Assembly (NCBI GenBank): GCA_044892525.1
Contig: CM097886.1
Span: forward strand, 43,214,001 to 43,278,000
Length of the DNA: 64,000 nucleotides
Origin: Schmidtea polychroa
Taxonomy: Eukaryota
Direction: 5' to 3'
In this document: in pieces, positions 1-58,654 of the stretch
Numbering within the stretch: position 1 is the first letter of the stretch
Layout: each line of letters starts with the position of its first letter
Translations under genes and position numbers: made by a program
Notes under the pieces: generated by a model
What the model was told of the DNA's origin: nothing
The model's input: the letters and a program-made list of their open reading frames with translations, nothing else
Database searches by the model: none

Positions 1-317
1 TTGAGAAACAAAGTTATGAACTAAAAGTTCCTCTTATAAGAGGAATTGAAGAGTTAGAAAAAGGAGTATTAAAAGGAGTTCGGATCAGAGAGCGGAATAT
101 CAAATAAAAAGGTGAAACTTAGTTTTAAATCGCACAAGGTCGAGACGTCCAGGGCGATGTTCGATAGAAAATTGTGAGCAAAATCGTGGTTAACTAAAAG
201 TTGTAATTATTTATTGAGAATTGTAAATTTGCTATAAACAAATATACGTTGGGAGTTTGTGTTTGTCAATTTTGGGACACGTGGAATCAGAGTAACCAAC
301 GGTCGACTTTTTAGTAT

Positions 318-485
318 TGGTGGGTTACTGATGATCAAATATTTTGCTCTTTAGTGCTGTTACCAGCGTAACCCAAGATACGACATTGTTTACCGCTTGA
401 TACCCGTTGAACGATCAACGTTGGTACTGTATCAAGAGGGTGAGTGTTCGCAAAAAGTGAGCGCTTGAAGGCTTGTGTCCGATTT
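318..485 (-). ncRNA. Candidate structured RNA motif, copy 1 (three-way junction plus long hairpin; tRNA-like/PBS-like end)
   Basis: Pairings read on + strand: GGGTTAC 322-328 / GTAACCC 368-374; GCTG 356-359 / CAGC 364-367; CTTGATAC 396-403 / GTATCAAG 429-436 enclosing CGTTGA-acga-TCAACG. Same architecture at 1180-1401 and 21541-21723. Strand assignment is uncertain. Confidence 0.55.
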
Positions 486-1179
486 GGCCTGGTCCCTTCA
501 CCAGATTGTCTTCCCAATACCATGCCCTATTCATCCCACTTATCTCCCACATACATCATTTTTTTCAATTCATGCACACACGCACATGTTTCATGGCAAC
601 TCTCTAGTGAAAGTTAATAATTATTTATTAAAATACCACACATAATTCAGGTTTATGTTTGATTAATTTCCCGTTCAATCAAAATACCAAAAATTAATAC
701 TCAATTTTAATTCAGGCAATCCAGATTAAATTAAAGTTGAGTTTAATTATCCAGATTTCTTTTCCTTTTAAAAATTAAATTTTCAATTAATAATAAAAAT
801 AAAAATTTAATCCAAGGTGTTTAAATCACCTATTTATAATCAACATAATTTTGATAATTTGAATTTTTTTTTCTAATTTATAATGGTAAATTTAATATTT
901 TTAATTTTAAATATATATCGCTGAACAATTTAGCTCTGTCGGTGCTTGGCAAATTGTCAGAATCCCCCGTAGATTCCTAATTTGTCATCACTTAGGCGGG
1001 TTGTCCGGTTCAGCGTAATCACTTAGTTAACCCCCCATATTTAGAGATACGGATGCAAAACGGCCCGTCATAATGTCGGTCTGTACCAGGATTGAGGTTT
1101 ATTTCTGCCCGGATTTGTAACTCATACCCTTGAATTACAGAGTCTCTCTTTGAACCGGTTAGTTGGTATTTTATGACTA

Positions 1180-1401
1180 TGGTGGGTTACAGGTACTGTA
1201 AAATCTTTACCTCCTCATGCTGTTTCCAGCGTAACCCAGAATACAATTTATAGCTGACCACTTGATACCCGTTGAGCAATCAACGTTGGTACTGTATCAA
1301 GGGTTTGGGCGCTAGCAAAAAGTGAGCATGCTTAACATACTATAATTGTCTAGCACCCCCTGGGGTTCACGGACTGCCGATAGAAGGCCTGTGTCCGATT
1401 T
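1180..1401 (-). ncRNA. Candidate structured RNA motif, copy 2
   Basis: GGGTTAC 1184-1190 / GTAACCC 1231-1237; AGGTA 1191-1195 / TACCT 1208-1212; GCTG-tttc-CAGC 1219-1230; CTTGATAC 1261-1268 / GTATCAAG 1294-1301 enclosing CGTTGA-gcaa-TCAACG; shared GAAGGC(C/T)TGTGTCCGATTT block. Confidence 0.55.
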
Positions 1402-1502
1402 CTTTTCGTCCCCGTTACGACAATTAACATTGTAATAAAAGAAAATCAAAATGCCCCGCTATGGACGCACTAGTGAAGATTTATTTGGACAACATGAATA
1501 AC

Positions 1503-1967
1503 TTATCGTGTGCTGGTCGGCCCTCTTGGTGTAGCCTCTGATTCAGTAGCATGGAGAGCTAATTGGGCCTGACTGGCCTGCCTTATCCTCGCTCGCGCCG
1601 CTTTTCCCGGCCGAATCTTCTTCCTTGGGGCTACCGCTGTTGGGGCGTTTTCCTTCGATCGACGGAGCAACTCATCTAAGGGCCGGATCTTGGCAATGAC
1701 CTCTCGCTCCAGCTCCTGTTGATGCACCTTGACTTCCAGTTCCCTCACTCTTAGGCGGAGGGCCCGCAACTCAATCTGGTCTTGTGCATTCTGAAGTTGT
1801 AGTTGGGTAATCAACTTCATCCTCTTCTTCATCTCCGCTGGTGGGAACCAGGTGCACTCGAAGTTCCGACAGTGGGCCTTGACTCGTGTCCACTTGGTCC
1901 GGTATTCTTCCGCCTGTCGTTGTGCCCGTTCCCTATCGGCTCGCATCTCTTCCAAGAGTTCCTGCAC
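1503..1967 (-). CDS. Orphan coiled-coil protein with basic C-terminus (ORF-B); probably the 3' exon of a spliced ORF
   Basis: 154-codon GC-rich ORF in AT-rich context; heptad-like QLQLQNAQDQIELRALRLRVRELEVKV; no ATG at the start, preceded by a pyrimidine tract and acceptor (ctttgttttag|TG CAG); a decayed homologue exists at 21113-21310. Confidence 0.65.
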   Translation of the reverse strand: MQELLEEMRADRERAQRQAEEYRTKWTRVKAHCRNFECTWFPPAEMKKRMKLITQLQLQNAQDQIELRALRLRVRELEVKVHQQELEREVIAKIRPLDELLRRSKENAPTAVAPRKKIRPGKAARARIRQASQAQLALHATESEATPRGPTSTR

Positions 1968-2471
1968 TAAAACAAAGGTAACATCAATATCTTTCTACAT
2001 TATTGTCGATGTATTCTTGCCCTATCGCGGCCACCATCACTAAACGAGCCACTATCCTCACCCCATAACCCCGCATTTATGTGCCTCTAAACCCCGTTCC
2101 ACTCCTAGGAGTCTCTCCAAAGACTCGTGGTGCTGTTAAGGATACTGACCCTTAGCTGTATCGCGGTCAAACTAGGTGAAAAATCTATAATTGAGTTACG
2201 AGTAATAACAAACTACTAACATCAGGTGGGCAGAATCGATGAGTTTGCAGTTAACTTTAATTACCAAATAAAGAAAATGTTCACAATTAGATTATTATAC
2301 AAGACATAAATTGGTAACCAAGGACGTTTATCGAGTTAAACAATAATGTACATTTAAAGGTCGAAATCAATACATGCAAACTGTAAATTTTATTCAACCG
2401 AATACGGTCATAGATCAATGTAAATTTGTTCGCGGCACGGTACCGCACAGTGTTGATTCTTGATCTGGTTA

Positions 2472-2936
2472 TCACTTTGATTTGGCTGGATTGATCTTTC
2501 GTGGGCGACCGCGCTTTCGTGTTTGCTCCGGCTCTCGATAGGGACTTCGCGGCCATTCCAGTCCACGGCGGAGGGCTGCGGTCCGCTTAGGATGACATTG
2601 GGCTCGAGCGTAGCCGTCGCAGTCTTCTAATTCACCAGCCAAAGTTGCTTCCTCGAGCCGGTGTAGTCGATCTATCGCCACCGTCACCTCGTCAAAGGCG
2701 TCGATCAAAGCTAATGACGCGCGATTGAGGTAAGGCTCCACCTTTGGGGCCACTGGGATCACATTCTGATAGGTCCAGTCATGGATCTTGTACCAGATCC
2801 ATCTGGACCGTAGCCGGGCGATTTCTGCGTCCTCTCTCAATCGGACGGCTTCGTCTGCTTCCTCGCCGGTAATTTCTAGGCTCGAGTCGACTGATGAGGG
2901 GCCGGCCGGCATATTCCTTGACCTAGTGTTGGGCAT
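2472..2936 (-). CDS. Orphan protein with C-terminal AT-hook-like motif (ORF-A)
   Basis: ATG-initiated 154-aa GC-rich ORF ending RKRGRPRKINPAKSK; splice-acceptor-like tttatattacag 2 nt before the ATG. No family recognised. Confidence 0.6.
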   Translation of the reverse strand: MPNTRSRNMPAGPSSVDSSLEITGEEADEAVRLREDAEIARLRSRWIWYKIHDWTYQNVIPVAPKVEPYLNRASLALIDAFDEVTVAIDRLHRLEEATLAGELEDCDGYARAQCHPKRTAALRRGLEWPRSPYREPEQTRKRGRPRKINPAKSK

Positions 2937-3989
2937 GACTGTAATATAAACAAAATATTAGAACCAATCTTTGTACTTCTATTACGTTTGATCACTCCAA
3001 AATGTCCAAATACCTCATTACAATTTATATACACGCATAACACCCAACCAGTTCAACAGACAATGATTTGTAGGCGAAGTAAATTAATTTACGAATTTAT
3101 TTCTATATTTGGTTCATATATCCAATTTAATAAATTAGTTCCAGATTACTAAATTAAATCAAGTTCCTATATTCCAGATCGGTAAATTAGGTTTATCAAC
3201 TTAAGGGTGGGCATAATTAAGGTAGACAATTTCGCATTAAAATAAATATTTGAATGAAATTTCATAAATTAAATTAAAATAGATATTTGAATGAATTAAT
3301 TAACTGAAAAATTTGAATTTCATAAGTCGATTAAAATTACCCGTCCAAATGGATTTGTTTATCTTAATTAAAATTTTAATTCATTATTTCACAATAAGCT
3401 CTCTTTCTTAAAAGGAAATTTCTCTTTTTAATCTACAAAATTTTGCTGCTAAGACCCACTACGAGGGAGAACATTGCTATGTATCGAAAATTATATTCGG
3501 TCCCTAGTAATTTCTAACCGTAGGGGTTGTGGGTAGCTCTATCCTCATCCTAATGGGCAAGTAACTAAAATTTGTTAAATTTTCTATCCGTTTCATTTCA
3601 GGGATTCAATCTTCTCAACTCCCATTTCAATCAAGGAATATATCTGGATAAATTTTCTAGACAGTCGTGGGCTAATGACAGTTTACATGTGCCCTCTTAC
3701 TTCATTTGCAAGTTGTTTGTACTCCATTCTTGGTCATCCCAATTTTTTGGTGTCTACATTTATACGTACAGTGGAAATGCCAGAATAAAGTTTTTGCTCA
3801 AAGGGGTTTTGGCGAGTCCCTTTTTTCGCTTACCTTCCTACATCCTGGGTAAGACTTTTCTAGTGACTGAGAAGGTTTGGTAAATGAGTTTTATGATTAT
3901 TACTAAATATAATTGTTCGTTCTTGTTGAATTTAATAATAATAACCTTAAGAATGAGGTTGGTAATAATAATAGTAATAATAATGATAC

Positions 3990-4230
3990 AAAATACATTA
4001 ATAATAATACTCATTGTAATAATAATATTAAAATAATAGTAATAATAGTGACACGAAATATATTAATAATAATACTCATTGTAACAATAATATTAAATTT
4101 ACAGTAATGATAATGATACGCAATATTAATAATAATACTCATTGTGATAGTAATATTAAATTTACAGTAGTGATAATGATACGAAATATATTAATAATAA
4201 TACTCATTGTAATAATAATATTAGTAAGAA
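3990..4230. repeat. About 63-66 bp imperfect tandem repeat (x4) within AAT-rich low-complexity tract
   Basis: Core ATTAATAATAATACTCATTGT recurs at about 3997, 4062, 4125 and 4190. Confidence 0.8.
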
Positions 4231-4960
4231 TGATGGAGATAAAAATAATAATAAGAAGAGCAATAATCATAACAACGAGGATGGTAATATTAGTAATGAT
4301 AATAACCTCAATAATAACAATGACAATATGGTTAATGATGGTACTAATAAACATAGATTCGTAGAGTATGGGATTACCACATGTGGGAAATCACTTGCGG
4401 AAAAATCATGAACTCATTTTTCGCCCTGAGATGTACAATGATATTTCTAAGAGTAAAGTAAGTCAACTAGGTTCCTGCAGCAAATTAAACTAATACTTTT
4501 AGGTAGTCCTTAGGGACTATAGGAATCGAAGAGTTATTTATGTAAACTTACGGGTAATCCTCCTATGTCACAATAAGTCGATTATGGCAAGAGCCTTTAT
4601 GAAAATTTATAACTCGTCATTTTTCGCATACCAAAATTCTAGCTAGATTTTAAAATGAGCTGATTTAGGACACAACGGGTAATGAAGGTATATTTCGGGG
4701 GGGGGGGGGGGGTCATTTAAGAAACTTGTAATTTAGTTTTTTCTGAACCTAATATAAGTTAAATATACATTAAGGAAACTTTATACTCCTATATACTTCC
4801 ATAAGGTAATAATATACATTTTAGTAAAGTAAATCTGTTGAAAATTAATAATAATAATAGAAAATTAATAATAATAATCATAATGATCCTAAAGATGGAA
4901 ATTGCTAAATTAACATTGGAACATATTACTATCTAAAATTATACATTAACATGAGTTCAT

Positions 4961-5136
4961 NNNNNNNNNNNNNNNNNNNNNNNNNNNNNNNNNNNNNNNN
5001 NNNNNNNNNNNNNNNNNNNNNNNNNNNNNNNNNNNNNNNNNNNNNNNNNNNNNNNNNNNNNNNNNNNNNNNNNNNNNNNNNNNNNNNNNNNNNNNNNNNN
5101 NNNNNNNNNNNNNNNNNNNNNNNNNNNNNNNNNNNN
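4961..5136. other. Assembly gap (N run). Other gaps: 7550-7697, 17082-17414, 43028-43156, 44425-44552, 54823-55053, 56518-56680
   Basis: N characters in the sequence. Confidence 1.
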
Positions 5137-6269
5137 AATCTATAATTTATCCTTTTCTAATTATAATGTAAATACGTATTAAGGAAGTTAATGTACTTGT
5201 ATATGCCATTATATGGCAACGATATACCCCCTTTTCTTAATGTAGTTTTTAGAAGATCAATCATGATAATAGCAAGGACACCCAAATTGATAATATTATT
5301 AGGACTCAAAAAAAAATTTGTTTGAAGATTTTATGTCATCTACCTTTCAATACGCATAGAGGCAATAAAAATTGTTAAAGGATTTATAAAATATTTATTG
5401 AACGTGAACTAAAATACATTAAACAAAATTATGAATAGTAGTACTAAAATTAGTTAATATCAGGTATTAGTTTATGCAATTAGCCGACTACCGAAAGCCT
5501 CTGTATTAATTTGAGTCTGGGATATTTCCCGTTTAGATGATCCTAGTGGTCTGTTTCCTATATCAGAATTAAGTGTTGATTTTTGGTATGTCGTTTACTG
5601 AAAAGTCGAGTTAATTAAAATTTTCCTACTTTCCCGACCCAACTGGATACGGTACGATAGGCCTTATTGTATTATGTTTCCCGCGATTACTTTCCCGAAG
5701 TTTATTTCGTCCGCATAGTCCCTGTGACTATGCCAACTACCGGTATGGGTTTACCGCCCTACTCCTGGTTAGAACCATTAGTTCGTGGCGACCTCCGGTT
5801 AAAAAAAAAAGTTTAGATTTTTATGCATGTGGGGTCGTAGACCCAAAATTTGTGCGTGTGGTCTATAAATTGGAAACAAGGCTGATCAGCATAGTGACTA
5901 TAACCCGTTCACAATGCTGGTCACTCTTATTTCGTGATAGTAAGATTAAACAAAAAAAAACAAAAAGTTAATCAATATAATGAAATGAAATCACAAATAA
6001 TAAAATAACAATTATAAAATAAATAACAATCATGATAAAATTAATCAATCGTCCTTACTATTAGTGGGTTCCGAATTTTTCAAGAAAAATTTTGGCATAA
6101 AAAGATTAAATTGTGACTAAAATGCGTCGGTATATATACCTATTTTGTACACGTGTATGTATTGATGTATTAAAACAAACTCGAATTCTTTTTATTCCAG
6201 AATTTTCTATTTTGTAATTTTGATATTTTTAATGGCGATTTTTGCGTCATAATTTTTATTTTTATTTTT

Positions 6270-6755
6270 AAAATTTTATTTCCTAAATATTTTTTGCTAA
6301 TTTTTCCTCCATGATGGATTTGGCACGGTTCCAGAACATTCCATATTACTTTTAATTCAATTTTTATTTTTAACTGATATTTTACGAATTTCTTTTTAAG
6401 AAATTTTATTTTTAATACTAATTTATTTATTTTTCTAAATTTTATTGTTTAAGGTAGCTTTTATGATGGTCATCGCCATTTTTATGGAATGTTCTGGGTT
6501 TTTCTGGAATTTTTTTGCTATTTTTACCATCTTTTAAGTTATTCGAGTTTGTTTTTTGTAACTCTGTGTTTATTTGGCTATTTTTGAGTTAGATTTTGCA
6601 TAACTTCTTGTTTTTGTATAATTTTATTTAATTTCTGTGTTTTAGGTTTTTGTTGTTTTTTTCCTTTCATTACCATTGGTTATTTGGTGTAGTTTTTAAT
6701 ATTTAACTATACTTTTTGCTTTTTGCATGCTGTGTACCTACACATTTCCGTCACA
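6270..6755. repeat. Dispersed repeat, possibly an LTR fragment (ends ...CATTTCCGTCACA); paralogue at about 18225-18812
   Basis: Shared blocks CCTCCATGATGGATTT, CCAGAACATT, CGCCATTTTTATG(G/A)AAT and TGTGTAC..ACACATTTC(C)GTC in the same order and orientation in both copies. Confidence 0.65.
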
Positions 6756-7697
6756 ATTAGAAATTTGGGTCTAGAAGTCAGTTCTAGCCCAACAACTATT
6801 TCAGGAATTAAGCATTTTTATCGGGAAATTTAAATGGATAGTATAATTTCCAACATTGTGAACTGATTTTGTGTAACGGATTTCGGTAATATTTTAACGT
6901 CTTAATGGATTTTTTTTTACTCTTCTGAAAATGATTTTGGTAAATGATTTTAGTAATATTTTAGTAATAATTTGTACTCTTCTGTAGATGATTTTGGTAA
7001 TATTTTAGCGTTTTGAATGAATTTTTTTTAAGTCGTATTTTGACACTAAATGATTCCAAAATGGTTTCATGCTTCTGGTAAGTATATTTGATTTTATCTT
7101 TCTCAATTTTTTGCTTGTATTTAATTAATAAATGTAATAAATTTAATGTAGTTTGGCTCGACCATCGGGTGGCGGTGCTTCTAAAATTAGAATATGTAAA
7201 ATTCTAAGGACATTATTGGAGAAAGGTGTTCTATATTTACCTTCGACATTAGGGGAATCCTAAATCGATAATTTTAATAAAAAATTTTCTTTGTATAAGT
7301 AAATTACCCAATTAATTAATAATAGAGTATACATTAGCTGATTAGTAGTATTAACACGATCCCGATTAATATAAAACTTGGGGGGGGGGGTAATTTATGA
7401 AAATTATAAATTTTGATGTTTAAAATTTAATTTATCTGTATATATTCTATATTGATATTTGATACTATTATCTTGACTATTTTTCAACCTGGGGGTAATT
7501 AAGAACGTTTGTAATAAAAAAAATTCTTAAGGGATTAAATAACTGCATGNNNNNNNNNNNNNNNNNNNNNNNNNNNNNNNNNNNNNNNNNNNNNNNNNNN
7601 NNNNNNNNNNNNNNNNNNNNNNNNNNNNNNNNNNNNNNNNNNNNNNNNNNNNNNNNNNNNNNNNNNNNNNNNNNNNNNNNNNNNNNNNNNNNNNNNN

Positions 7698-10600: not shown

Positions 10601-11313
10601 TGCCTATGTATAGACTTCATACTTCAACATGTCTTAAAACACCATCCCTTCCTTTTCCATGGACACAACATTAGCATCCTTGCCTATGCCGATGATATTG
10701 TACTAATCTCTGACTCGTACTACTCTATAAACCTAGCACTTTGTGAAACGACACAACTGGCTTCACAAGTTAACCTTCGATTTAAGCCCTCGAAATCCGG
10801 ATACTTTCATATCAACCATGATGACAATTATAACCCAATCCGCCTTTATGACGAACTCCTCCCTAGAATTGATGACTCTAACCTCTACCGATACCTTGGA
10901 GTTGATTTCACGTATAAAGTAAGGCACAACATTGAGGAGAGACTTGAAAATGCCTTAAATGATACCAAAACAATTCTAGCCTCCCATCTGCACCCTGCTC
11001 AAAAACTCAATGCCTACAAAATTTTCATACATTCTCGCCTTACCTATATCTACCGCAACTGCGAAATTCACCACAGTATTCTCGACTCCGAAAGAAACCT
11101 TAAAAATAATGCAGGCGCCACCCAAAGACTAAAATCTATAATCAAAAACGCCATTGGCGATAAAATTTGCGAGCTCAATAACAATTTCCTATATACATCC
11201 ATCAAACTTGGAGGACTGGGGTTAACATCCCTCATTGATGAATATCTTATCCAGGGAATTGTCCACCTCATACGTGCCCTCAACTCAACTGACACTGATT
11301 TTCGCAACCTCGT
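7698..11313 (+). mobile_element. Non-LTR retrotransposon, NeSL/R5-like (RLE-group) RT, 5' portion: zinc-finger-like region, Ulp1-like protease fold and RT; inactivated
   Basis: Frame open from the gap edge at 7698; in-frame TGA at 9054-9056 continues in frame into the 9099 ORF; frameshift near 9545; RT motifs APGIDG, WRPISIMNTSYRIF, WLDISDAFGSLPH, GVKQGCPLS, LAYADD, YRYLGV, GGLG. Clade is inferred from the protease-like domain upstream of RT, as in NeSL-1. Confidence 0.85.
9662..11313 (+). pseudogene. Reverse transcriptase ORF segment of the non-LTR element, interrupted by the gypsy insertion
   Basis: RT motifs present. The last two residues (VK*) are read from the inserted LTR; the true frame resumes at 16483 (N-L-V-L-S-E-L after removing the insertion). 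Confidence 0.9.
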
Positions 11314-11558
11314 TGTTAAATAAAACTAGAAGTCGAATTCAAATTATATTCAAAAATTATAACAATATCGGTTTGACTAAACAAATCATTAAATTGACGA
11401 TTAAGCATTTCTAAATAACAATAATAATTATGTACGCCATAATATAATACGAATATAATACTTTAATATATGTATATGTTAATTTCTTAATAGTAATAAT
11501 TCAGATGTAATTTATTATTATAATATTATATTGTGCTAATAATTAAATCTTCCTCACA
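11314..11558 (-). repeat. 3' LTR of the gypsy element
   Basis: TG...CA termini; PPT AAACAGGGGGGA immediately upstream on the minus strand (11559-11570). Confidence 0.97.
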
Positions 11559-14129
11559 TCCCCCCTGTTTAAAAGGCTTTAGCCATTCTACATTTCGAAT
11601 CATTGTTTTACCTTCTTTATCCATAAGTTCGTAACTTCTATCATGTAGTTTTTTTATCACTCGAAAAGGTCCTCTGTATCTATCATCTTCTTTTTTTCTT
11701 GTGTCTATCTTTACTAAAACGTTGTCATCTATTTTAAATTCTCTATTAATTCTATCTGCGTTTCTGTACTTAACATTTCTTTGCTTTTCTTGTATCTCTT
11801 CAATGATTCTAATTCGGTCATTAGTAACTTCCTTTTTGTTTTGCCATTCTCTTGTTATTCGAAACCCAAATACTATTTCCGCTGGACTTTTCCCTAATGT
11901 ACTTTGTACGGTTGCGTTCAAAGCAAATTCAATTTCTGGTAATACCTCTACCCAATTGCTTTTTAATCTATCTTTAATTGAGGTACTCATGAAATCTCTT
12001 ATTGTTCGAAATCGCCGTTCTATTAATCCATTTGCACTATGATGGTATGGACTTGAAAATTGAAGCATTATGTTATGGGTTTTAGCTAATTCTTTCATCA
12101 CACCTGATTCAAATGTCTTCCCACAATCTACTTGAATTATCCTAGGAGAACCGTATTTTAGAATCCAAAATTTCATTATTGTGTCCGCTGTTGTTTTCTC
12201 ATCTTGCTTAGAAACTGCTGTAAGAGAAATATATCGAGTGCACATATCAATAATTCCTAAAATATACTTTTTCCCATGTACACTTGTTTTCAAAGGTCCA
12301 CAAAAATCTATAGCAATTGTTTCAAACGGTTTCGACACTTCCGTTTTTAGTATAGTTTCCTTTGTTTTAGTTGTTAGTGTTTTTCTTTTTTGACATAATT
12401 CACAATTTTGAATAATTTCTGTAGTTATCATTTGTAATTCATCCATGTCATAATTTACTTTTATGTAGTCAATCACTTTTTTGCAACCTGCGTGGCATAG
12501 GATTTTATGCATTTCTTTGATAAATTTTTCGCGATTGTTTTTAGGAATCCAAATTTTATTTTCTTTTGTCATGATAACATCATCATCAATCTTAAATTTA
12601 GTTTTTACATTTTTCATGATTAATTCTTTTTGATTTTCTATCTCAACATTACCCTTTTGCCAAATCACACCTTGCTTAACAGCTGTCATTGTTAAAAGTC
12701 TTGTTTTCATTTTTTCTGTTTTAGGATTTTCATGAACTTCCATACATTGAGTACATCGTCCACACTTATCTCGGGATAATGCATCTGCATTGGTATGTTC
12801 CGTACCTTTTCTAAATGAAATATCCATGTCCAAACTGCTAAGAAAATTTATCCAAGTTTGGAATTGTGCCGTGATTGGCTTTTTTGTTGCCATCATGAAT
12901 GTTATTGCTTTATGGTCCGTTCTTAATTTAAATTTTTTCCCATACAAATAATGTTTAAAATGTTGAGTAAAATAATAAATGGCCAATAACTCCTTCCTTG
13001 TTATACAATAACCTATTTCATGCTTATTCATTGAATGCGAACCATATGCAATTACTCGCTCATGTCCCTGTTCGTCTAACTGTGATAAAACCGCACCAAT
13101 TGTGTCAAAACTTGCATCAGTGTCCAAAATAAATTCTTTCTGAAAGTTAGGGTATATTAATACTGGTGTTTTCGATAATGCATTTTTTAATTCTTCAAAT
13201 GCTTCTTCACATTTTTCTGACCATATAAGTTTTTCATTAGTCGTACCACATATAGACTCTAATATTCGTGAAAACATTGAATAATTTTTTATAAATTTTC
13301 TATAATAATTACACAACCCCAAAAAACTTCTTAGTTGTTTCAAACATTGAGGTCTTACAAAATTTTTAATTGCTTCAATTTTATTTTCATCCACTTTCAC
13401 ACCTTCATTATTAATTATATGGCCTAAAAATTTTGTCTCATTTTTTAAGAATATACATTTTTCTGGATTTACTCGTAATCCCGCTTCCTTAATTTTCATT
13501 AATACTTCATTTATTCTTTTAAAATGCTCTTCTTTATTTGTAGAAAATATTAATATGTCATCCAAATATACAATAGCTGTATTCCACAGAAGTTTTCCTA
13601 AAACCATATTCATTAGTTTTTGAAATGTAGCCGGTGCCGCAGCAATTCCAAAAGGCATTCTATTAAAACAGTACTGTCCGCTCCTTGTTGAAAATGCGGT
13701 TTTTTCTTGTGAATTATTTGTTAACTCCACTTGATAATATGCACTTCCAAGATCTATAGTACTAAAAAACTTGGATCCATTGAGTGAATCTAACATTTGT
13801 TCAATATTAGGCATTGGAAATATTTGTCTTTCTGTTATTTTATTTAGGTTTCTAAAATCCAAACACAATCTGATGTCATTCTTTTCTTTTTTCCAAACAC
13901 ATACCAATGGAGTATTCCAACTCGAATCACATTTCCTAATAATACCATTTTCTTCCAAATTTTTTATAGCCTCCTCAATCTTTTCTTCTAAATGAGCCGG
14001 TTGTCGTCTAGGGTTCATGTAAATTGGGCCCTCAGTAGTTTTGATTTCGTGCCATAATAAATCTGTTTTTCCAATGTCCCATTTATCAGCCATAAAAACT
14101 TCTTTATTTTCATTAATTATCTGATACAT
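11526..14129 (-). CDS. pol: Pol: reverse transcriptase, RNase H and integrase
   Basis: LCLDFRNLN, YLDDILI, TDAS, TDHK, HHCC zinc-binding (HKILCH..CELC), DDE integrase (IAIDF, VDCG, LIERR), GPF motif. The stop codon lies inside the 3' LTR. Confidence 0.95.
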   Translation of the reverse strand: MYQIINENKEVFMADKWDIGKTDLLWHEIKTTEGPIYMNPRRQPAHLEEKIEEAIKNLEENGIIRKCDSSWNTPLVCVWKKEKNDIRLCLDFRNLNKITERQIFPMPNIEQMLDSLNGSKFFSTIDLGSAYYQVELTNNSQEKTAFSTRSGQYCFNRMPFGIAAAPATFQKLMNMVLGKLLWNTAIVYLDDILIFSTNKEEHFKRINEVLMKIKEAGLRVNPEKCIFLKNETKFLGHIINNEGVKVDENKIEAIKNFVRPQCLKQLRSFLGLCNYYRKFIKNYSMFSRILESICGTTNEKLIWSEKCEEAFEELKNALSKTPVLIYPNFQKEFILDTDASFDTIGAVLSQLDEQGHERVIAYGSHSMNKHEIGYCITRKELLAIYYFTQHFKHYLYGKKFKLRTDHKAITFMMATKKPITAQFQTWINFLSSLDMDISFRKGTEHTNADALSRDKCGRCTQCMEVHENPKTEKMKTRLLTMTAVKQGVIWQKGNVEIENQKELIMKNVKTKFKIDDDVIMTKENKIWIPKNNREKFIKEMHKILCHAGCKKVIDYIKVNYDMDELQMITTEIIQNCELCQKRKTLTTKTKETILKTEVSKPFETIAIDFCGPLKTSVHGKKYILGIIDMCTRYISLTAVSKQDEKTTADTIMKFWILKYGSPRIIQVDCGKTFESGVMKELAKTHNIMLQFSSPYHHSANGLIERRFRTIRDFMSTSIKDRLKSNWVEVLPEIEFALNATVQSTLGKSPAEIVFGFRITREWQNKKEVTNDRIRIIEEIQEKQRNVKYRNADRINREFKIDDNVLVKIDTRKKEDDRYRGPFRVIKKLHDRSYELMDKEGKTMIRNVEWLKPFKQGGCEEDLIISTI

Positions 14130-14130
14130 T

Positions 14131-15126
14131 TTATCTCCTTTTTTTTAAATCAAATAATTTTATTGCTCGACTAAATCTTTTCTCATCATTATATGAGTTG
14201 CTAAATCTTGCCTCAATATTACAAATTTCATTAAAATTATTTTCTATTTCCGTATTTTCAGTTATACTATCGTTTATTTTCATTAACTTGATGTTGAATT
14301 GACGAAGTAAATCTATCCCACCAATAATTGACGGTGAAACCTTTTTAACAACAACAAAAATCACATTCTCTTCTTTGTTACCGATTTGAATCTTCAATTT
14401 AACATTGCCAAATGTTTCCAATGGACTGCCATTTGCACACCAAATTCCTTCATTGTGAGGTTTAATATCTATCTCACCTATTTCTTTGATGATCGAGCTA
14501 TCTATTACATTCATTCTAGCCCCCGTATCCAATAGACAATGTTTGAAATAAATCCTATTAATCCCAACTATTACGCTTGGTCTTCCACCCATCTTATCAT
14601 ATACAATTTCTAAATCGTCATTTAAAACAGAAATATTATTTATATGTTTATCCAATGTTTCGTCATAAACAAACCTTTTACTGCTATTTATTAATTTTGC
14701 CTCACAAATACTTATTATCTTCTTACAATTCTGATCACATTTATTTTCAATTACATTAATTTTATCACGCATCCAATTACAATCATTAATATCAGTTTTA
14801 TCTCTTACGTCATATATAATCTTACTGTTACTCTGATTATCTTCCTTTATTACATCATATTTTTTTAATTTACTTTTCACGTTTTTAATACTATCTTCTA
14901 AAATTACATCTGATTTAAATCTAATATTTTTTACCTTTAAATTTGATTTAGATATACTGTCTAAATTATTATTACTACTTTTAAAATTATACATACTGTC
15001 TAAATTACTATTACTATTATTATTAAAAAATATACTATACTTATCTTGGCGCACACAATCATCATTATTACCTTTTAATGCATGGCTCCTATCATCTCGC
15101 CTAATGATGGAGCCCTCCCATTTGGG
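14131..15126 (-). CDS. N-terminal Pol segment with aspartic protease (LLDTGA), entered by -1 frameshift from gag
   Basis: Frame open from the slippery site near 15120 to 14131; CLLDTGARMN; separated from the RT frame by one extra A in an A8 run (14139-14146). Confidence 0.88.
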   Translation of the reverse strand, partial: PKWEGSIIRRDDRSHALKGNNDDCVRQDKYSIFFNNNSNSNLDSMYNFKSSNNNLDSISKSNLKVKNIRFKSDVILEDSIKNVKSKLKKYDVIKEDNQSNSKIIYDVRDKTDINDCNWMRDKINVIENKCDQNCKKIISICEAKLINSSKRFVYDETLDKHINNISVLNDDLEIVYDKMGGRPSVIVGINRIYFKHCLLDTGARMNVIDSSIIKEIGEIDIKPHNEGIWCANGSPLETFGNVKLKIQIGNKEENVIFVVVKKVSPSIIGGIDLLRQFNIKLMKINDSITENTEIENNFNEICNIEARFSNSYNDEKRFSRAIKLFDLKKRR

Positions 15127-16238
15127 TGTCCATCACTTCGGGTAGACTGAGAATCCTCCGCTTCGTTTCCGCGGTCTTCCATAGCTGCCACTCTTCCATC
15201 GGCATATCTGTCTTGATATCGTCTGTTATCCTCGTAATTTCTAGATTGGTTTCTTCCTGATGATCGTGTGTCTGCTGTTCCCCAACATTGAAACCGCAAG
15301 TGACCACGTTTTCCACATCCTGAGCATGAAATCGATGGACATTCTCCCCGGTGATGGCCAGATTCCTTACAAGCGTTGCATCTCAATTCTGAATTTATCT
15401 TGTTATTTTTACATTCTCTAATCATGTGTCCTTCTTTTCCACATCCATAACACTTCTTTTTTGGGCATTCTCGACTCGAATGTCCTAGTTCTTGACAATT
15501 CCAACATGTAACAACGCGACTTCCACTTGCTCTGTTGTCTCTATGGTAATACTGTTGATTAGTATTCCTTCCAGAATCGAAGCTTTGAGCGTGCGGAATA
15601 GAATTGAATCTTGGTTCAAAATTTCGTCTTTCTTGAACATTCGAAAAATTGCGTTGTCGATCTTGTATATCGGCAAATCCTTGTCGTTTCTTTATTACGT
15701 TTGCGAACGTTTCTTTTCTTTGCATAACTGCAATACTAGAAACTTCAATGTTGATAGCATCAACTTTACGAATTACGTCCTTGATCTCTTCGACTTTTAA
15801 AGCATCTCGCATCTTGATCTCTTTTTGGATTTCTTTGTCTTTGACACAATGTATCAAAAAATAAGCGACTAATTCGTTTTTATCCCACTTGTGTTTCAAT
15901 ACTTTGTCGACCATTTTCTCAATCTTTTCGAAAAACACTGGCGCTGCATCGTTATCTTTCTCATAATTGTATAAGTTCAGAAAATCGCCTATCAGTGTTG
16001 ACGGCTTCTTGAAAGCTTCTCTGAGTCTATCTTCAAAATTAATAAATTTGACATCGACGGCTTCATAAATCGGTAAAATATCTCTTGAAATAAGACATTT
16101 TATCATCATATTTTGGTTATCTTGATCTAACCCACATAACTGAAAATATCGCTTACATTCTTCAATGAAAGTTTCGATTTCGTGTCTTCCGTCGTAAACA
16201 TCCGGAATCATCTTATTCACTATTGCCAGGGTCGCCAT
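15075..16238 (-). CDS. gag: Gag with four CCHC zinc knuckles
   Basis: CWNCQELGHSSREC, CYGCGKEGHMIREC, CNACKESGHHRGEC, CSGCGKRGHLRFQC; intact 387-aa ORF. Confidence 0.95.
   Translation of the reverse strand: MATLAIVNKMIPDVYDGRHEIETFIEECKRYFQLCGLDQDNQNMMIKCLISRDILPIYEAVDVKFINFEDRLREAFKKPSTLIGDFLNLYNYEKDNDAAPVFFEKIEKMVDKVLKHKWDKNELVAYFLIHCVKDKEIQKEIKMRDALKVEEIKDVIRKVDAINIEVSSIAVMQRKETFANVIKKRQGFADIQDRQRNFSNVQERRNFEPRFNSIPHAQSFDSGRNTNQQYYHRDNRASGSRVVTCWNCQELGHSSRECPKKKCYGCGKEGHMIRECKNNKINSELRCNACKESGHHRGECPSISCSGCGKRGHLRFQCWGTADTRSSGRNQSRNYEDNRRYQDRYADGRVAAMEDRGNEAEDSQSTRSDGHPNGRAPSLGEMIGAMH
15084..15126 (-). promoter_or_regulatory. -1 programmed ribosomal frameshift signal
   Basis: Heptamer C CCA AAT (15126-15120) in the gag frame, 5-nt spacer, then hairpin GGCTCC-ATCAT...ATGAT-a-GGAGCC; the -1 frame is open into the protease. 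Confidence 0.8.
16226..16237 (-). promoter_or_regulatory. Primer-binding site TGGCGACCCTGG
   Basis: Directly abuts the 5' LTR end. TGGCGACC fits tRNA-Arg-type 3' ends (one mismatch to vertebrate tRNA-Asn PBS); the cognate tRNA is not resolved. Confidence 0.8.
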
Positions 16239-16482
16239 GTTAAATAAAACTAGAAGTCGAATTCAAATTATATTCAAAAATTATAACAATATCGGTTTGA
16301 CTAAACAAATCATTAAATTGACGATTAAGCATTTCTAAATAACAATAATAATTATGTACGCCATAATATAATACGAATATAATACTTTAATATATGTATA
16401 TGTTAATTTCTTAATAGTAATAATTCAGATGTAATTTATTATTATAATATTATATTGTGCTAATAATTAAATCTTCCTTACA
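16238..16482 (-). repeat. 5' LTR of the gypsy element
   Basis: Matches 11314-11558 except one base near the end (CCTTACA vs CCTCACA). Confidence 0.97.
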
Positions 16483-20413: not shown

Positions 20414-21112
20414 TTTCAAAAAAAATTTCGAATTAGTTTGCCATTTTCTAAAATTGATTATTTATAATAATAATATAATAATAATTATTTCATTTTTTAT
20501 TACATTATTTTATTTATTTATTACTAATAGTATTTGCTATATTGAAATAATTTCACTAATATTCTAAAAGATTTCTTAGAATATAATTTCTTTTTTATAC
20601 GAAACTTTATTTTATATTAATTTGATATTAAAATAATTACTAAATAAAAAAAAATATTTTTAAATTTTTTTTAATTTTTAATTTTTTAAAAATTTTTTTA
20701 TTTCAATTTATATTTTAATTTTTGGAATCACATATTTTGTGAATGAATAGAAAAATTTAAAAATCTTTGATGATTGCTTTCTTTGATATATTCGATTAAA
20801 ACTGGTCATAATTTTGATCCCGGGAATTCGGTATTTCCATTTCTAAATCTTCCGTGTTGAAAAATTAATATAAAATTAAAATCAGAAGTTTTTTAAAATT
20901 CATTATAAAATTATGTTTTTTTTAATTTATTATTAACATATGTATATTGTTGTAAGCAATTCATATATTAAATAAAATATTCCGATAAAAATATCTGCTT
21001 TTCCGTTCATTAAAGCTTTCTACAATTTTTATCATTGTGTTAGAAGATTGGCAAGTATTAAAAGATACGGGATAAATAACGCTGATGAGATGGTAACAAT
21101 CTCTACAAATTT

Positions 21113-21310
21113 GAAATGGCACAGAAACAAGTGGAAGATCTACAACTTAGTCCCACGGAGATGCAGAAGCGACTAAAATCAATGCAGTAATCGCAACTTT
21201 AAAGTTACCAAGATCAAGTTGAGCTGAAAGCGCTCTGACTCCGAGTACGACAGCTAGAAATACAAATAAATCAGAACACTATCGACCGCGATCTGATAGG
21301 ACAAATCAGC
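21113..21310 (+). pseudogene. Decayed homologue of orphan ORF-B (1503-1967)
   Basis: SPTEMQKRLKSMQ*SQL*SYQDQVELKAL*LRVRQLEIQINQNTIDRDLIGQI aligns without gaps to PPAEMKKRMKLITQLQLQNAQDQIELRALRLRVRELEVKVHQQELEREVIAKI. Confidence 0.8.
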
Positions 21311-21540
21311 ACGTGGAATTGAAATTGACGATATCCGCCAAACGATAACAGTTAACGAGGAATAAAAAACGACTCGTAAAAGCCAAACAAGGTTGATCAG
21401 ACTAAATAAATTTTCTGCAATCATCGATTTTTGTCATAAATAATTATATTCGTGTGTGGGATATTTAGTAAGAAATACCGGGAAAGGAAGAGAAAAAGTC
21501 TAATTAAAGTTACTACCAAAGTATGGAGCTAAGCAAAAAG

Positions 21541-21723
21541 TTGGACCCAGGCCTTCTAACGTCAGTCCTCGAACACATTTGAATATTTTCCGATTGTAGT
21601 GTATTCACTTTTCACTCGATACAGTTCCAACGTTGATCACTCAACGGATATTGAGTAGTACAGTATTCTTGTACGCTGGAAACCACACGAAATGGTAAAA
21701 TGTGGTCAACCTGTAATCCACCA
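21541..21723 (+). ncRNA. Structured RNA motif, copy 3 (decayed; inverted relative to copies 1 and 2)
   Basis: GGAC.CAGGCCTTCTA..CAGTCC, GATACAGT.CCAACGTTGAT..TCAACGG, TACGCTGGAAAC and CCTGTAA.CCACCATA match the reverse complement of 1176-1401. Confidence 0.6.
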
Positions 21724-21788
21724 TAACTTTCTCTACAAAATAGTAAACTTTATAATCAATAACTATATTTACTTAAATAACCTATATT

Positions 21789-28397: not shown

Positions 28398-56354
<27,957 letters not shown>

Positions 56355-58654
56355 AATGTGAATGGATAAAATTCAAATACAATTAAATTTTAAACAAATG
56401 TATTAACTGTTTATGAAACGAAATTGAACAAAAAATATTAATTTACTATTAATTCATTTTATTTTTGATTTAAAACTTAGTACATAAATTAAAGAAAAAA
56501 TTTTACTTAAAGCATAANNNNNNNNNNNNNNNNNNNNNNNNNNNNNNNNNNNNNNNNNNNNNNNNNNNNNNNNNNNNNNNNNNNNNNNNNNNNNNNNNNN
56601 NNNNNNNNNNNNNNNNNNNNNNNNNNNNNNNNNNNNNNNNNNNNNNNNNNNNNNNNNNNNNNNNNNNNNNNNNNNNNNNNTAAAATCATTTGATAAAAGT
56701 TAGAACTAAGTAGACTAGTTTCGAACTTTTGGCTCTCATCAGTACTATGCAGGAGACGCGAGGATTTCCCTTCGCGCCAGGTACGTATACAATATTGTTG
56801 ATTCAACTCTATTGCATACTTTCCCTGCTACACTGGAAATCACGTCACTTGCAAATTAGCTAAATCACAGAAAAAATATCTGCAAACGTGTAAACATGGC
56901 GTATGAAAAATCATATTCGCATGTGGAAACACCGACTATACACAGAGAATACTATAAGTAAATATCTTTACCTGGGTCTTTTAGGCACAGTTTACAATTA
57001 GGATGTTGCTCGCATTTGTGTAAAATTAATACTAGATTGTATATTTGAATTTCCATAGTGTTGGGGATACGTACGAAAAATTCAGAGTTTGTTTAAATAA
57101 GTCGGAAATACATAGCATGGAAACCGCACTAAATCAAATTAGAATCTATGAATTTACATTTAATAATACAAAGTAAGGTACTCAACACATTCAGGATAAA
57201 TAAAAGATATTTAATAAAACTGATAAATTCAAGACGTAGTTAAGAGAAAAACAACGCATTCAGAAAATATTCCAACTCGAAAATAAAAAAATAATAAATA
57301 AAATTAATAAATAATACTATCAAAAATTAAGATTGACTATTAATCTTATTTACATACGAACGATATGTGACAAAAATAATTTACATATAAAAGATATGTG
57401 ACAAAAATTGCAGAATTTAAGAAAAAGAATAGGAAAAATTATTTAAAAAATTTATAAAAAATATTCATGAAAATCGCTAAATAAATAGTGAATTAAATAG
57501 AAAATAAAATATTAAATAATTCGATTATTTAAAAAAATCAATTAAATACAAAAAATTTCTTCAAACAAAATAAAAATAATGATGCAACACTAGAGTAGAT
57601 GTGCGCTGCAGTTCTGAATTTTTCAGAATTTTACACACGCTGCTTTCATAGGGTATAGTATAGATACCGGCTAAAAATTCATATATATATACAGCTAGTT
57701 AAGATAACCAAAGATTTGCGCTCAGTAAATACTGATCGAAAATTCAGTCAGAAAAGTAATTTTAATCTGAAATCAACACTATTTACCCGACATTGCTAGG
57801 CGCTCTCAGTTTTCAGTTTATGCAATTGCGGTAAGTTGAATTGTATTTTTGATAACTTTATGTAGTGTGATTTTATGAAAAGCATAAATTGATGTAATTT
57901 TATGATTAATAAAATTTTTAAATTTGATTTGTTTTAGTTATAATTTGTTTTATGTTTTGTTTTTTTTAATGGTTACTTTATTTTTGCATTTTGAATAACA
58001 ATCATAATTTGCATAAATATTTTTTGATCTGATGCTAAGAATCTTCATGTTTTATTGATGTCCTAGATTTTATGAGGAGTATGAAATTACATTTATTAGT
58101 TTAGAAATAAAGGCCGATCCCTGCTCAAATATTTGAAGAGAACCATAGAAAACATTTAGTAACGAGGACTACAGTTAAATGAACATATGACAACATCAAC
58201 AATAGAATAGATAAGGAATTATGACGTAAGACCTTTTATCGCAGTCTAGGATCCGTTGGGAAAATACAATGAGGAGTAGTTTTAGCAATAGAGATCACCT
58301 ACTCATTGATTTTCAACCATTGTGTACAGTATCAACATGGTCGTCGCCATGGGTACACATTTGGTCTAATGTACAATAGTTATGAAAACGTTTAGGAAGG
58401 AGTCGATTTAGCATTTACAATTACCCCTAACACATTTAAAATAAAAATGACACACCCCTAAGAGAACAACAGAGGCAGAAGGCTTAAATTATCATTTAAT
58501 TGTTTAATATAATATGTACAGTTGATAAATAAAAATAATTTTTGGTTGTAATTAAATTTCAAATGTGTCAGATCATTTTGCCCCACCCCGTATAATTATC
58601 ACAAAATTAACCAATTTAACTTATTTTGTTATATGATTGGTTTCAATTTAACAC

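What the first reader, a model, noticed from the sequence alone, without database searches (positions are those of the whole stretch)
318..2936. Unassigned cassette: two orphan ORFs followed by a duplicated conserved structured RNA
Seen: on the minus strand, ORF-A (154 aa, AT-hook-like RGRPRK) and ORF-B (154 aa, coiled coil plus basic patch), each preceded by a splice-acceptor-like site, run into two copies of one folded motif about 862 bp apart. No RT, integrase, transposase, TIR or TSD is visible in 1-7500. The ORF-B plus RNA linkage recurs independently at 21.1-21.7 kb, so this is a dispersed family, not a one-off. An AT-rich block with TCCAGATT..AAATTAAA also recurs at about 720-760 and 3135-3180, hinting at an internally duplicated unit. 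Inference: either the accessory/antisense region of a giant gypsy element (planarian giant LTR elements are known) or a non-autonomous protein+RNA mobile unit that has not been described.
Basis: partly seen in the sequence, partly recalled or inferred. Interest (0 to 1): 0.85.

Follow-up and report, generated by a model that had tools for sequence, protein, structure and literature searches.

The report
Orphan two-ORF repeat with structured tail
A small dispersed repeat with no reverse transcriptase, in an AT-rich animal genome, carries two GC-rich reading frames with almost no known relatives and ends in a conserved folded RNA-like module; it is most likely a non-autonomous retroposon copied by another element's enzyme, and it is not part of a giant gypsy element.

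Summary
ORF-A (2936..2472) and ORF-B (1967..1503) are both open for 154 codons on the minus strand. They are followed by two copies of a ~190-230 nt module (1413..1180 and 500..318). A third copy with a decayed ORF-B remnant lies at 21.1-21.7 kb. A covariance model found a fourth, diverged copy at 58.2-58.4 kb.

The module's central hairpin is kept by compensatory changes. The three well-preserved copies stop being alike right after ...CCACCA. Rfam, ARAGORN, Pfam, PDB and Foldseek name nothing. ORF-B has one relative (75% identity, intact) among about 15 billion proteins; ORF-A has none that is credible.

The giant-gypsy reading is not supported. The only gypsy here is compact, bounded by its own LTRs at 11314-16482, and 8 kb away.

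Best reading (confidence 0.4): a non-LTR-type retroposon family without its own reverse transcriptase. Its structured 3' tail would be the handle for a reverse transcriptase supplied in trans, and ORF-B would be its own small basic helical protein. Supporting evidence is limited: four copies, one candidate target-site duplication and no partner element identified.

The parts
2472..2936 (-). ORF-A: 154 aa, predicted helical hairpin (residues 24-101) plus a disordered basic tail; no credible relatives
   Evidence: No credible relative in the word-based or full HMMER searches. GC 0.567, GC3 0.58.
2490..2522 (-). AT-hook-like core (RGRP flanked by basic residues) at ORF-A residues 139-149
   Evidence: Pfam AT_hook E 0.019, 15.2 bits, below the cut-off of 17.4.
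2939..2954 (-). Pyrimidine-rich tract ending in AG, 2 nt before the ORF-A ATG (splice-acceptor-like)
   Evidence: Read directly. Resembles a host acceptor seen. Not tested with expression data.
1968..2471 (-). Inter-ORF stretch: an AT-rich part (2181-2471, GC 0.32) and a GC-rich part (1968-2180, GC 0.46). No ORF, no special fold.
   Evidence: z -1.2.
1503..1967 (-). ORF-B: 154 aa, long predicted helices plus a conserved basic stretch. An acceptor-like AG overlaps its first codon (1968-1967).
   Evidence: One relative, P0001/P0002, 75% identical and stop-free.
1560..1622 (-). ORF-B residues 116-136: basic stretch, identical over 21 consecutive residues in P0001 and P0002
   Evidence: Alignment.
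1180..1413 (-). Module copy 2, the best preserved: first hairpin, U-rich linker, central hairpin 1258-1303, terminal Y-shaped domain 1180-1238 ending in ...CCACCA
   Evidence: (z -2.98).
318..500 (-). Module copy 1: solo, with no ORF-B remnant upstream. It lacks about 51 nt that copies 2 and 3 have. Central hairpin 393-438, terminal domain 318-375.
   Evidence: (z -2.18).
21125..21307 (+). Decayed ORF-B remnant of copy 3: 61 codons alignable, 43% identity, with 3 in-frame stops. The rest of ORF-B is not recognisable.
21535..21723 (+). Module copy 3: about 75% identical to copy 2, terminal stem partly decayed, ends in ...CCACCA
21100..21109 (+). Candidate 10-bp target-site duplication of copy 3, upstream member. 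Its partner is at 21730-21739.
   Evidence: p about 0.03 in flank shuffles.
21730..21739 (+). Candidate target-site duplication of copy 3, downstream member
58213..58430 (+). Module copy 4: diverged and solo. The central hairpin is kept through compensatory changes; the terminal domain is decayed.
   Evidence: CM hit of 30.6 bits, E about 1e-5 with a model built without it. Extent. Pair counts.
720..756 (+). Pair of TCCAGAT heptamers 30 nt apart in AT-rich DNA between the two modules
   Evidence: Membership in the unit is not shown.
3140..3179 (+). Pair of TCCAGAT heptamers 33 nt apart, about 200 nt upstream of ORF-A in minus-strand sense
   Evidence: Membership in the unit is not shown.

Best explanation
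A dispersed, non-LTR-type retroposon family with no reverse transcriptase of its own.

Shown:
- The long form is a roughly 2-kb unit on the minus strand. It holds ORF-A, ORF-B and a ~230-nt structured 3' module that ends in a stem followed by CCA.
- Shorter copies keep the 3' module and lose the 5' part.

Inferred:
- The unit is transcribed in the sense of the ORFs.
- The 3' module is the cis element that a reverse transcriptase from an autonomous, tail-specific non-LTR element recognises. An R2/NeSL-type element is present in this window. Copying would start at a nicked target, so incomplete copying gives 5'-truncated inserts.
- ORF-B (long helices plus a conserved basic stretch) acts as the element's own RNA-binding or packaging protein, in the way ORF1/Gag proteins do.
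- ORF-A (helical hairpin plus an AT-hook-like tail) is a second accessory protein, possibly for contact with chromatin or DNA.
For: - Dispersal: there are four module copies on both strands in 64 kb, at different stages of AT-decay (GC 0.45, 0.44, 0.41, 0.38).
- Shared 3' boundary: copies 1-3 are alike up to ...CCACCA and not beyond it.
- Different 5' extents: ORF-A + ORF-B + module; an ORF-B remnant + module; and the module alone, twice.
- Copy 3 cannot hold ORF-A, because an intact zinc-finger ORF ends about 700 nt upstream of its remnant.
- Copy 3 has a candidate 10-bp target duplication at the expected places.
- In copy 3 the module is much better conserved than ORF-B (about 75% DNA identity against barely alignable DNA). 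Both parts decay equally after insertion, so the difference must predate insertion. The module was therefore the more constrained part in the source lineages.
- Structure is selected. On a MAFFT alignment not fitted to structure, the central hairpin has 95% of cells paired. Six of 16 pairs changed on both sides; 2 of 500 shuffles reach that, and slid controls give 0-1.
- The sense strand folds better than the antisense strand (-71.7 kcal/mol, z -3.0 against -65.0, z -1.4).
- The ORF-B frame is maintained. P0001 and P0002 are 75% identical and stop-free, while only 2-7% of neutral substitution simulations stay open at that divergence.
- No RT, integrase or transposase lies in or next to any copy.
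- An R2-type reverse transcriptase family exists in the same genome.
Against: - There are only four copies, and only one candidate target duplication (p about 0.03). None was found for copies 1, 2 and 4.
- No element in the window carries both an RT and this tail, so the partner is hypothetical.
- ORF-B matches no ORF1 or Gag family.
- ORF-A is linked to the module only once.
- Both ORFs are preceded by host-type acceptor-like sites, and an AT-rich, intron-like stretch separates them. This looks more like a gene with introns than a copy of a processed RNA.
- An AATAAA lies about 20 nt after the ORF-B stop, upstream of the module. The module may therefore not be part of the ORF-B mRNA.
- The depletion of differences in stems between copies 1 and 2 is strong only on the consensus structure, which is biased (3/60 against 37/92). 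On the single-sequence fold it is weak (p 0.035).
- Strand cannot be settled from wobble pairs (7 G-U against 4 A-C).
Confidence: 0.4

Rival explanations
1. A lineage-specific multicopy host gene or gene pair. It would be cis-spliced, or resolved by spliced-leader trans-splicing, and its conserved structured 3' region has a cellular role. It would have spread by DNA-level duplication, and copies 1, 3 and 4 are decayed duplicates.
For: - Host-type acceptor-like sites lie before both ORFs, and an AT-rich intron-like spacer separates them.
- Unit 1 and copy 1 are adjacent and in the same orientation.
- No target duplications were found for three of four copies.
- The ORF-B frame is kept in relatives.
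Against: - Four copies in 64 kb on both strands is repeat-like density.
- The composition is unlike host genes (GC3 0.58-0.60 against 0.23-0.28).
- There is no relative beyond one 75% match among about 15 billion proteins.
- The copies share a sharp 3' boundary and no flanks.
Confidence: 0.25
2. A fragment or cargo of a larger mobile element not represented intact in this window. One example is the 3' part of an autonomous element whose enzyme region is deleted here. Another is a segment carried by a DNA transposon or Helitron-like element.
For: - The window starts only 317 nt beyond copy 1.
- The 5' limit of unit 1 is undefined.
- The GC-richer stretch 901-1179 after module copy 2 is unexplained.
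Against: - There is no ORF of 80 aa or more on the minus strand between 2937 and 7476.
- No TE-protein fragments lie in 1-7900.
- No terminal inverted or long direct repeats surround any copy.
- The flanks of the four copies are unrelated.
Confidence: 0.18
3. A DNA copy of a small RNA replicon or virus-like RNA that entered the genome. The CCA-terminated 3' structure would be its replication tag, and ORF-A and ORF-B its small basic proteins.
For: - The GC composition looks foreign.
- The unit is small, with two small basic helical proteins that have no credible cellular homologues.
- A structured 3' end finishes in a stem plus CCA.
Against: - There is no polymerase.
- Nothing was found in viral contigs, viral structure libraries or Rfam.
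- ARAGORN and Rfam do not recognise the end as tRNA-like.
- Old, decayed copies show long residence and repeated copying inside the genome.
- Acceptor-like sites and an intron-like spacer are present.
Confidence: 0.07
4. The accessory or antisense region of a giant gypsy (Burro-like) LTR element. Read on the plus strand, the module would be a primer-binding site plus leader.
For: - On the plus strand each module begins with TGG, as primer-binding sites do.
- A gypsy element is present in the window.
Against: - The DNA preceding the plus-strand TGG is unrelated among copies, so there is no shared LTR.
- The only LTR pair encloses a compact element at 11314-16482.
- No gag or pol lies next to any of the four copies.
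- The Burro architecture described in PMC6431247 is absent.
Confidence: 0.04

Closest known systems
Non-LTR retrotransposons without their own RT that encode only a Gag/ORF1-type protein (mammalian HAL1 'half-L1'; Drosophila HeT-A). From my own knowledge, not from a tool.
   Same: - Protein-coding but without a reverse transcriptase.
- Presumed dependence on an enzyme supplied in trans.
- A helical or coiled protein with a basic nucleic-acid-binding part.
- An important 3' untranslated region.
- 5'-truncated copies.
   Different: - ORF-A and ORF-B match no ORF1 or Gag family (no L1 ORF1 domain, RRM or zinc knuckle).
- There are two small ORFs instead of one.
- There is no poly(A) or telomeric context.
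- Acceptor-like sites lie before the ORFs.
Tail-specific ('stringent') LINE/SINE partnerships and the R2 3' UTR, where the reverse transcriptase binds a structured 3' RNA. From my own knowledge. R2-type proteins were the top PDB matches for the window's own RT.
   Same: - A structured 3' module of about 200-250 nt.
- Its structure is conserved more than its sequence.
- A precise common 3' end without a poly(A) tail.
- Solo tail copies.
   Different: - No LINE carrying this tail was found. The R2/NeSL-like element's 3' part is unreadable here, because of a nested insertion and an N run.
- The Rfam R2 element model and all other Rfam models give no match.
- The flanks show no sign of site specificity.
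tRNA-like 3' structures ending in CCA (viral TLS, retroplasmid transcripts, tRNA-like ends of long non-coding RNAs). From my own knowledge.
   Same: - The terminal domain is an 8-bp stem with two inner hairpins, followed by single-stranded CCA.
- It sits exactly at the shared boundary.
   Different: - Neither ARAGORN (including relaxed and mitochondrial modes) nor Rfam recognises it.
- It is only about 58 nt long and has no anticodon arm.
- Whether any RNA really ends there is unknown.
Giant gypsy 'Burro' elements of planarians (PMC6431247)
   Same: - AT-rich genome with GC-richer repeats.
- Accessory ORFs of unknown function are known in that family.
   Different: - There are no enclosing LTRs and no gag-pol.
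- The giant polyprotein is absent.
- Copies occur on their own.

Membership tests
Ty3/gypsy LTR retrotransposon (including giant Burro): internal or accessory region | The unit lies between a pair of long terminal repeats | tested here: not met
   Window self-BLAST finds one LTR pair, 11314-11558 / 16238-16482, which does not enclose the cassette or copies 3 and 4. An LTR to the left of the window start cannot be excluded.
Ty3/gypsy LTR retrotransposon (including giant Burro): internal or accessory region | gag/pol of the same element on the same strand, adjacent | tested here: not met
   No ORF of 80 aa or more on the minus strand in 2937-7476. No fragments of the window's gag/pol elsewhere.
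Ty3/gypsy LTR retrotransposon (including giant Burro): internal or accessory region | Primer-binding site directly after a shared LTR end (plus-strand reading of the module) | tested here: not met
   The sequences adjoining the boundary are unrelated among copies (p 0.27-0.72).
Autonomous non-LTR retrotransposon (LINE) | Reverse transcriptase and endonuclease ORF | tested here: not met
   Pfam finds none in ORF-A or ORF-B, and there is no other ORF in the unit.
Non-autonomous non-LTR retroposon (HAL1 / HeT-A / SINE-like tail sharer) | Common 3' end with variable 5' truncation among copies | tested here: met
   Four copies; copies 1-3 share a 3' boundary; three different 5' extents. The sample is small.
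Non-autonomous non-LTR retroposon (HAL1 / HeT-A / SINE-like tail sharer) | Target-site duplications flanking the copies | tested here: inconclusive
   One candidate 10-bp duplication at copy 3 (p about 0.03). None above chance for copies 1, 2 and 4.
Non-autonomous non-LTR retroposon (HAL1 / HeT-A / SINE-like tail sharer) | An autonomous partner carrying the same 3' tail | tested here: inconclusive
   Covariance-model searches of the window find the tail only at the four copies. The 3' part of the R2/NeSL-like element is unreadable here (N run 17082-17414). The rest of the genome is not available.
Non-autonomous non-LTR retroposon (HAL1 / HeT-A / SINE-like tail sharer) | Encoded protein homologous to ORF1/Gag | tested here: not met
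   No Pfam, PDB-sequence or Foldseek match.
SINE | Pol III-type head derived from tRNA, 5S or 7SL | tested here: not met
   No tRNA and no Rfam match. A run of five T inside the module on the sense strand (read) would also be unfavourable for Pol III.
tRNA-like 3' structure | Cloverleaf or TLS recognised by tRNA/TLS models | tested here: not met
   ARAGORN default, relaxed and mitochondrial modes. Rfam at E up to 10.
tRNA-like 3' structure | Terminal stem followed by 3' CCA | tested here: met
   GTAACCCACCA at 318-328 and 1180-1190, and GTAATCCACCA at 21713-21723. The stem is predicted.
tRNA-like 3' structure | Processing, CCA addition or charging by tRNA enzymes | not testable with these tools
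   Needs RNA end mapping and biochemistry.
Self-cleaving-ribozyme repeats (retrozymes, Penelope-like terminal repeats, HDV-like) | Match to a ribozyme model | tested here: not met
   No Rfam match at gathering score in the window, nor at E up to 10 in 200-1600.
AT-hook DNA-binding proteins | RGRP core in a basic context, scoring above the Pfam cut-off | tested here: inconclusive
   The core is present at ORF-A residues 139-149. It scores 15.2 bits against a cut-off of 17.4.

The most novel reading that the evidence does not exclude
A previously undescribed kind of protein-plus-RNA selfish unit. It would be a compositionally foreign cassette of about 2 kb whose two small proteins, without credible relatives, assemble with its own CCA-terminated structured 3' RNA. 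It would spread through that RNA tag using borrowed copying machinery. In effect this is a 'genomic tag' system in an animal genome, not a derivative of any catalogued LINE, SINE or LTR family.
Probability: 0.1. Interest if true: 0.75.

Novelty: new variant of a known kind. Interest (0 to 1): 0.35.

Why it matters
If the best reading holds, this is a protein-coding retroposon without a reverse transcriptase. Its mobility signal is a compact structured RNA with measurable covariation. Its proteins have almost no relatives (one for ORF-B, none credible for ORF-A) among about 15 billion sequences.

That would add a rare type to the short list of RT-less coding retroposons. It would also give a clean RNA handle for finding the enzyme family that copies it.

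For annotation, it shows that this repeat should not be merged into a gypsy family. The module's covariance model can be used to mask or classify copies. If it turns out to be a host gene family, the conserved structured 3' region is still an uncharacterised RNA element.

Tried and rejected
- Hammerhead, HDV-like or other ribozyme: no Rfam match. A heptamer in copy 1 on the plus strand that resembles part of a ribozyme core is absent from copy 2.
- tRNA or tRNA-derived SINE: ARAGORN is negative in all modes for the terminal domain.
- Primer-binding site plus leader of an LTR element (plus-strand reading): there is no shared upstream LTR.
- ORF-A and ORF-B as paralogues: BLASTP E 0.26-0.29, hhalign probability 0.15%.
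- ORF-A relative P0003 (3204 aa, E 5e-12): rejected as an artefact. It is a short tryptophan-containing match summed over many beta-type repeats of a CBM53-like protein, whereas ORF-A is predicted helical there.
- C2H2/AT-hook ORF 19166-20413 upstream of copy 3 as an ORF-A counterpart: only the AT-hook core matches.
- Internal duplication of the unit, inferred from the AT-rich block: no significant homology.
- Viral-contig hits to the hairpin pattern: they match only the 20-28 nt pattern itself, so they are chance.
- Metagenome and viral scans with ORF-B and with a longer module pattern: nothing.
- Weak covariance-model hits at 30367-30505 and 27714-27827: they vanish with the four-sequence model.
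- The spacer 901-1179 and the inter-ORF GC-rich stretch have no unusual fold.
The DNA of P0001 and P0002 could not be read.
Full report
**Context.** The window is AT-rich (mostly 22-32% GC). It carries animal-type genes:
- an intronless SNF transporter;
- a 3-hydroxyacyl-CoA dehydrogenase split by a short intron;
- a C2H2 zinc-finger protein.

Seven N runs were left untouched.

**The observation.**
- On the minus strand, ORF-A (2936..2472) and ORF-B (1967..1503) are each open for 154 codons.
- Both sit in the two most GC-rich islands of the whole window (up to 0.57-0.61).
- ORF-A has GC 0.567 and ORF-B 0.561, with GC3 of 0.58-0.60. Host genes here have GC3 of 0.23-0.28, and the window's other mobile-element ORFs 0.23-0.42.
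- Open frames this long occur in only about 1.5% of shuffles of each island.
- ORF-A ends in an RGRP core with basic flanks. Pfam AT_hook scores 15.2 bits, just under its cut-off.
- AlphaFold predicts a helical hairpin plus a disordered tail for ORF-A (pLDDT 65). For ORF-B it predicts long helices and a short basic helix (pLDDT 80).
- Each ORF is directly preceded by a pyrimidine-rich tract ending in AG. These tracts look like the real acceptor of a host gene. No tool here predicts introns, so I built and searched no joined exon model.

**The repeated module.**
- Segments 500..318 and 1413..1180 are 78% identical, with starts 862 bp apart.
- Both fold into the same shape: a first hairpin (copy 1 lacks part of it), a U-rich linker, a long central hairpin with an inner 6-bp stem, and a terminal Y-shaped domain.
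- In the terminal domain an 8-bp stem is followed by CCA.
- The fold is better than shuffles (z -2.2 and -3.0), and better in the ORF sense than in antisense (z -3.0 against -1.4).
- A third copy lies at 21535-21723 on the plus strand. It is preceded by an ORF-B remnant: 61 alignable codons, 43% identity, three in-frame stops, and the rest unrecognisable.
- A covariance model built from the three copies found a fourth copy at 58213-58430. It scored 30.6 bits, E about 1e-5, and homology reaches back to the first hairpin.
- A second model that included this copy found no more. No ORF-B trace adjoins copies 1 and 4.

**Is the structure selected?**
- On a plain MAFFT alignment of the central hairpin from the four copies, 95% of cells form standard pairs. 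Six of 16 pairs have changes on both sides. Two of 500 shuffles reach that, and sliding the partners gives 0-1.
- Most of the compensatory changes come from copy 4, whose two stems have different letters but the same shape.
- Differences between copies 1 and 2 avoid stems strongly on the consensus structure (3/60 against 37/92). That structure is itself biased towards conserved columns. On the single-sequence fold of copy 2 the effect is weak (15/106 against 20/73, p 0.035).
- Wobble pairs do not settle the strand.
- The neighbouring GC-richer stretches have no unusual fold.

**What the copies share.**
- Beyond ...CCACCA the flanks of copies 1-3 are unrelated (p 0.27-0.72), so the copies have a common 3' boundary.
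- Upstream they differ. Unit 1 has ORF-B and, further up, ORF-A. Copy 3 has an ORF-B remnant but no room for ORF-A, because an intact zinc-finger ORF ends at 20413. Copies 1 and 4 have the module only.
- In copy 3 the module is about 75% identical to copy 2, while ORF-B DNA hardly aligns. Decay after insertion is uniform, so the module must have been the more constrained part in the source lineages.
- Copy 3 has a candidate 10-bp target duplication at 21100 and 21730 (p about 0.03). The other copies have none above chance.

**Relatives.**
- ORF-B has one relative, P0001 (with its near-identical cluster mate P0002). Both are 157 aa, 75% identical and stop-free, with 21 consecutive identical residues over the basic stretch.
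- In substitution-only neutral simulations, 2-7% of sequences stay open at that divergence.
- ORF-A has no relative in the word-based search. In the full HMMER scan of 1.84 billion representatives its only hit is an artefact of a highly repetitive 3204-aa protein.
- Nothing relevant came from PDB sequence search or Foldseek against PDB and viral models.
- Rfam gave nothing, and neither did ARAGORN.
- Viral and metagenome scans were also blank.

**Surroundings and the gypsy hypothesis.**
- The window holds one gypsy element, at 11314-16482 on the minus strand.
- It has 245-bp LTRs that are 99.6% identical and a 5-bp target duplication. Its gag, protease and RT-RNase H-integrase ORFs are all open.
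- The element is compact and complete in itself. It is inserted into the reverse-transcriptase ORF of a plus-strand R2/NeSL-like non-LTR element (7908-11323), whose best solved relatives are R2 proteins at E 5e-46.
- The cassette lies 8.4 kb away from this gypsy. The intervening 2937-7476 has no minus-strand ORF of 80 aa or more and no fragments of the window's transposon proteins.
- Nothing like the Burro polyprotein architecture (PMC6431247) is present.
- The plus-strand reading of the module as a primer-binding site fails, because no shared LTR precedes it.

**The AT-rich block.** TCCAGAT occurs as two close pairs, at 720/750 and 3140/3173. These are four of 13 hits in the window, which is unlikely by chance on a rough count. 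The DNA around the pairs shows no significant homology, and the pairs do not accompany copies 3 and 4. I leave this unexplained and do not count it as part of the unit.

**Interpretation.**
- The anatomy fits a non-LTR-type retroposon family that relies on a reverse transcriptase supplied in trans. The family is dispersed, shares a 3' end, varies at the 5' end, has a structured tail more constrained than the coding part, and carries no enzyme.
- The tail would be the recognition element, and ORF-B would be the element's own small nucleic-acid-binding protein. This is inference, with confidence 0.4.
- Three points weigh against it. There are acceptor-like sites and an intron-like spacer. An AATAAA lies between the ORF-B stop and the module. 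Target duplications are scarce.
- These points keep a multicopy host gene with a structured 3' region in play (0.25). Also in play are a fragment of a larger unseen element (0.18) and, less likely, a DNA copy of an RNA replicon (0.07). The gypsy reading gets 0.04.

- The two covariance models are search profiles. The consensus lines that the tools printed were not used.
- Short IUPAC probes of up to 34 nt, taken from columns invariant among the window's own copies, were used in the DNA search.
These were ribozyme core, Pol III boxes, an Sm-type site, a tRNA 3' end and LINE tail repeats. I also sketched a degenerate rendering of the few bases after the 3' boundary.

Noticed in passing
11314-16482 (-): Compact, apparently intact Ty3/gypsy element. 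It has 245-bp LTRs that are 99.6% identical and a 5-bp target duplication. Its ORFs are gag with two zinc knuckles (16238..15075), protease (15054..14131) and RT-RNase H-integrase (14129..11526). It looks like a young insertion.
   Followed up: partly
7908-11323 (+): R2/NeSL-like non-LTR element: a zinc-finger-like ORF (382 aa), a Ulp1/C48 protease ORF (167 aa) and an RT ORF (553 aa; best PDB relatives are R2 proteins). The RT ORF is interrupted once, by the nested gypsy. Nothing recognisable follows on the far side, and an N run lies at 17082-17414.
   Followed up: partly
6277-6503 and 18233-18459: Direct repeats, 76% identical, that bracket the R2/NeSL-like element plus the gypsy. They could be copies of a repeated target or of another repeat family.
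   Followed up: no
17648-18182: Two tandem units of about 270 bp, 80% identical.
   Followed up: no
19166-20413 (+): Single-exon 415-aa C2H2 zinc-finger protein ending in three AT-hook-like RGRP/GRPK motifs, just upstream of module copy 3. It has no homology to ORF-A beyond the hook.
   Followed up: partly
23981-26026 (-): Sodium:neurotransmitter symporter (SNF family, Pfam E 1e-110) as one uninterrupted 681-aa ORF.
   Followed up: no
48004-49749 (-): hAT-like transposase remnants in two ORFs (386 aa with a weak hAT dimerisation domain, and 154 aa). The 154-aa length matches ORF-A and ORF-B by coincidence only.
   Followed up: partly
46366-46480 and 47469-47583: Direct repeats of 115 bp, 95.7% identical and 1.1 kb apart. 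Possibly the ends of a small element.
   Followed up: no
29813-30096 and 61840-62150: Inverted pair of about 300 bp, 72.6% identical. This is another dispersed repeat family.
   Followed up: no
4682-4734 and 7365-7412: Runs of eleven G with similar flanks, 2.7 kb apart. Each lies about 140-230 bp before an N run.
   Followed up: no
3930-4330: AT-rich minisatellite with a period of about 63-65 bp. Similar AT-rich arrays lie near 23.0 kb and 44.8 kb.
   Followed up: no
901-1179: Stretch of 41% GC directly after module copy 2. It has no ORF, no unusual fold and no other copy in the window, and its origin is unknown.
   Followed up: partly
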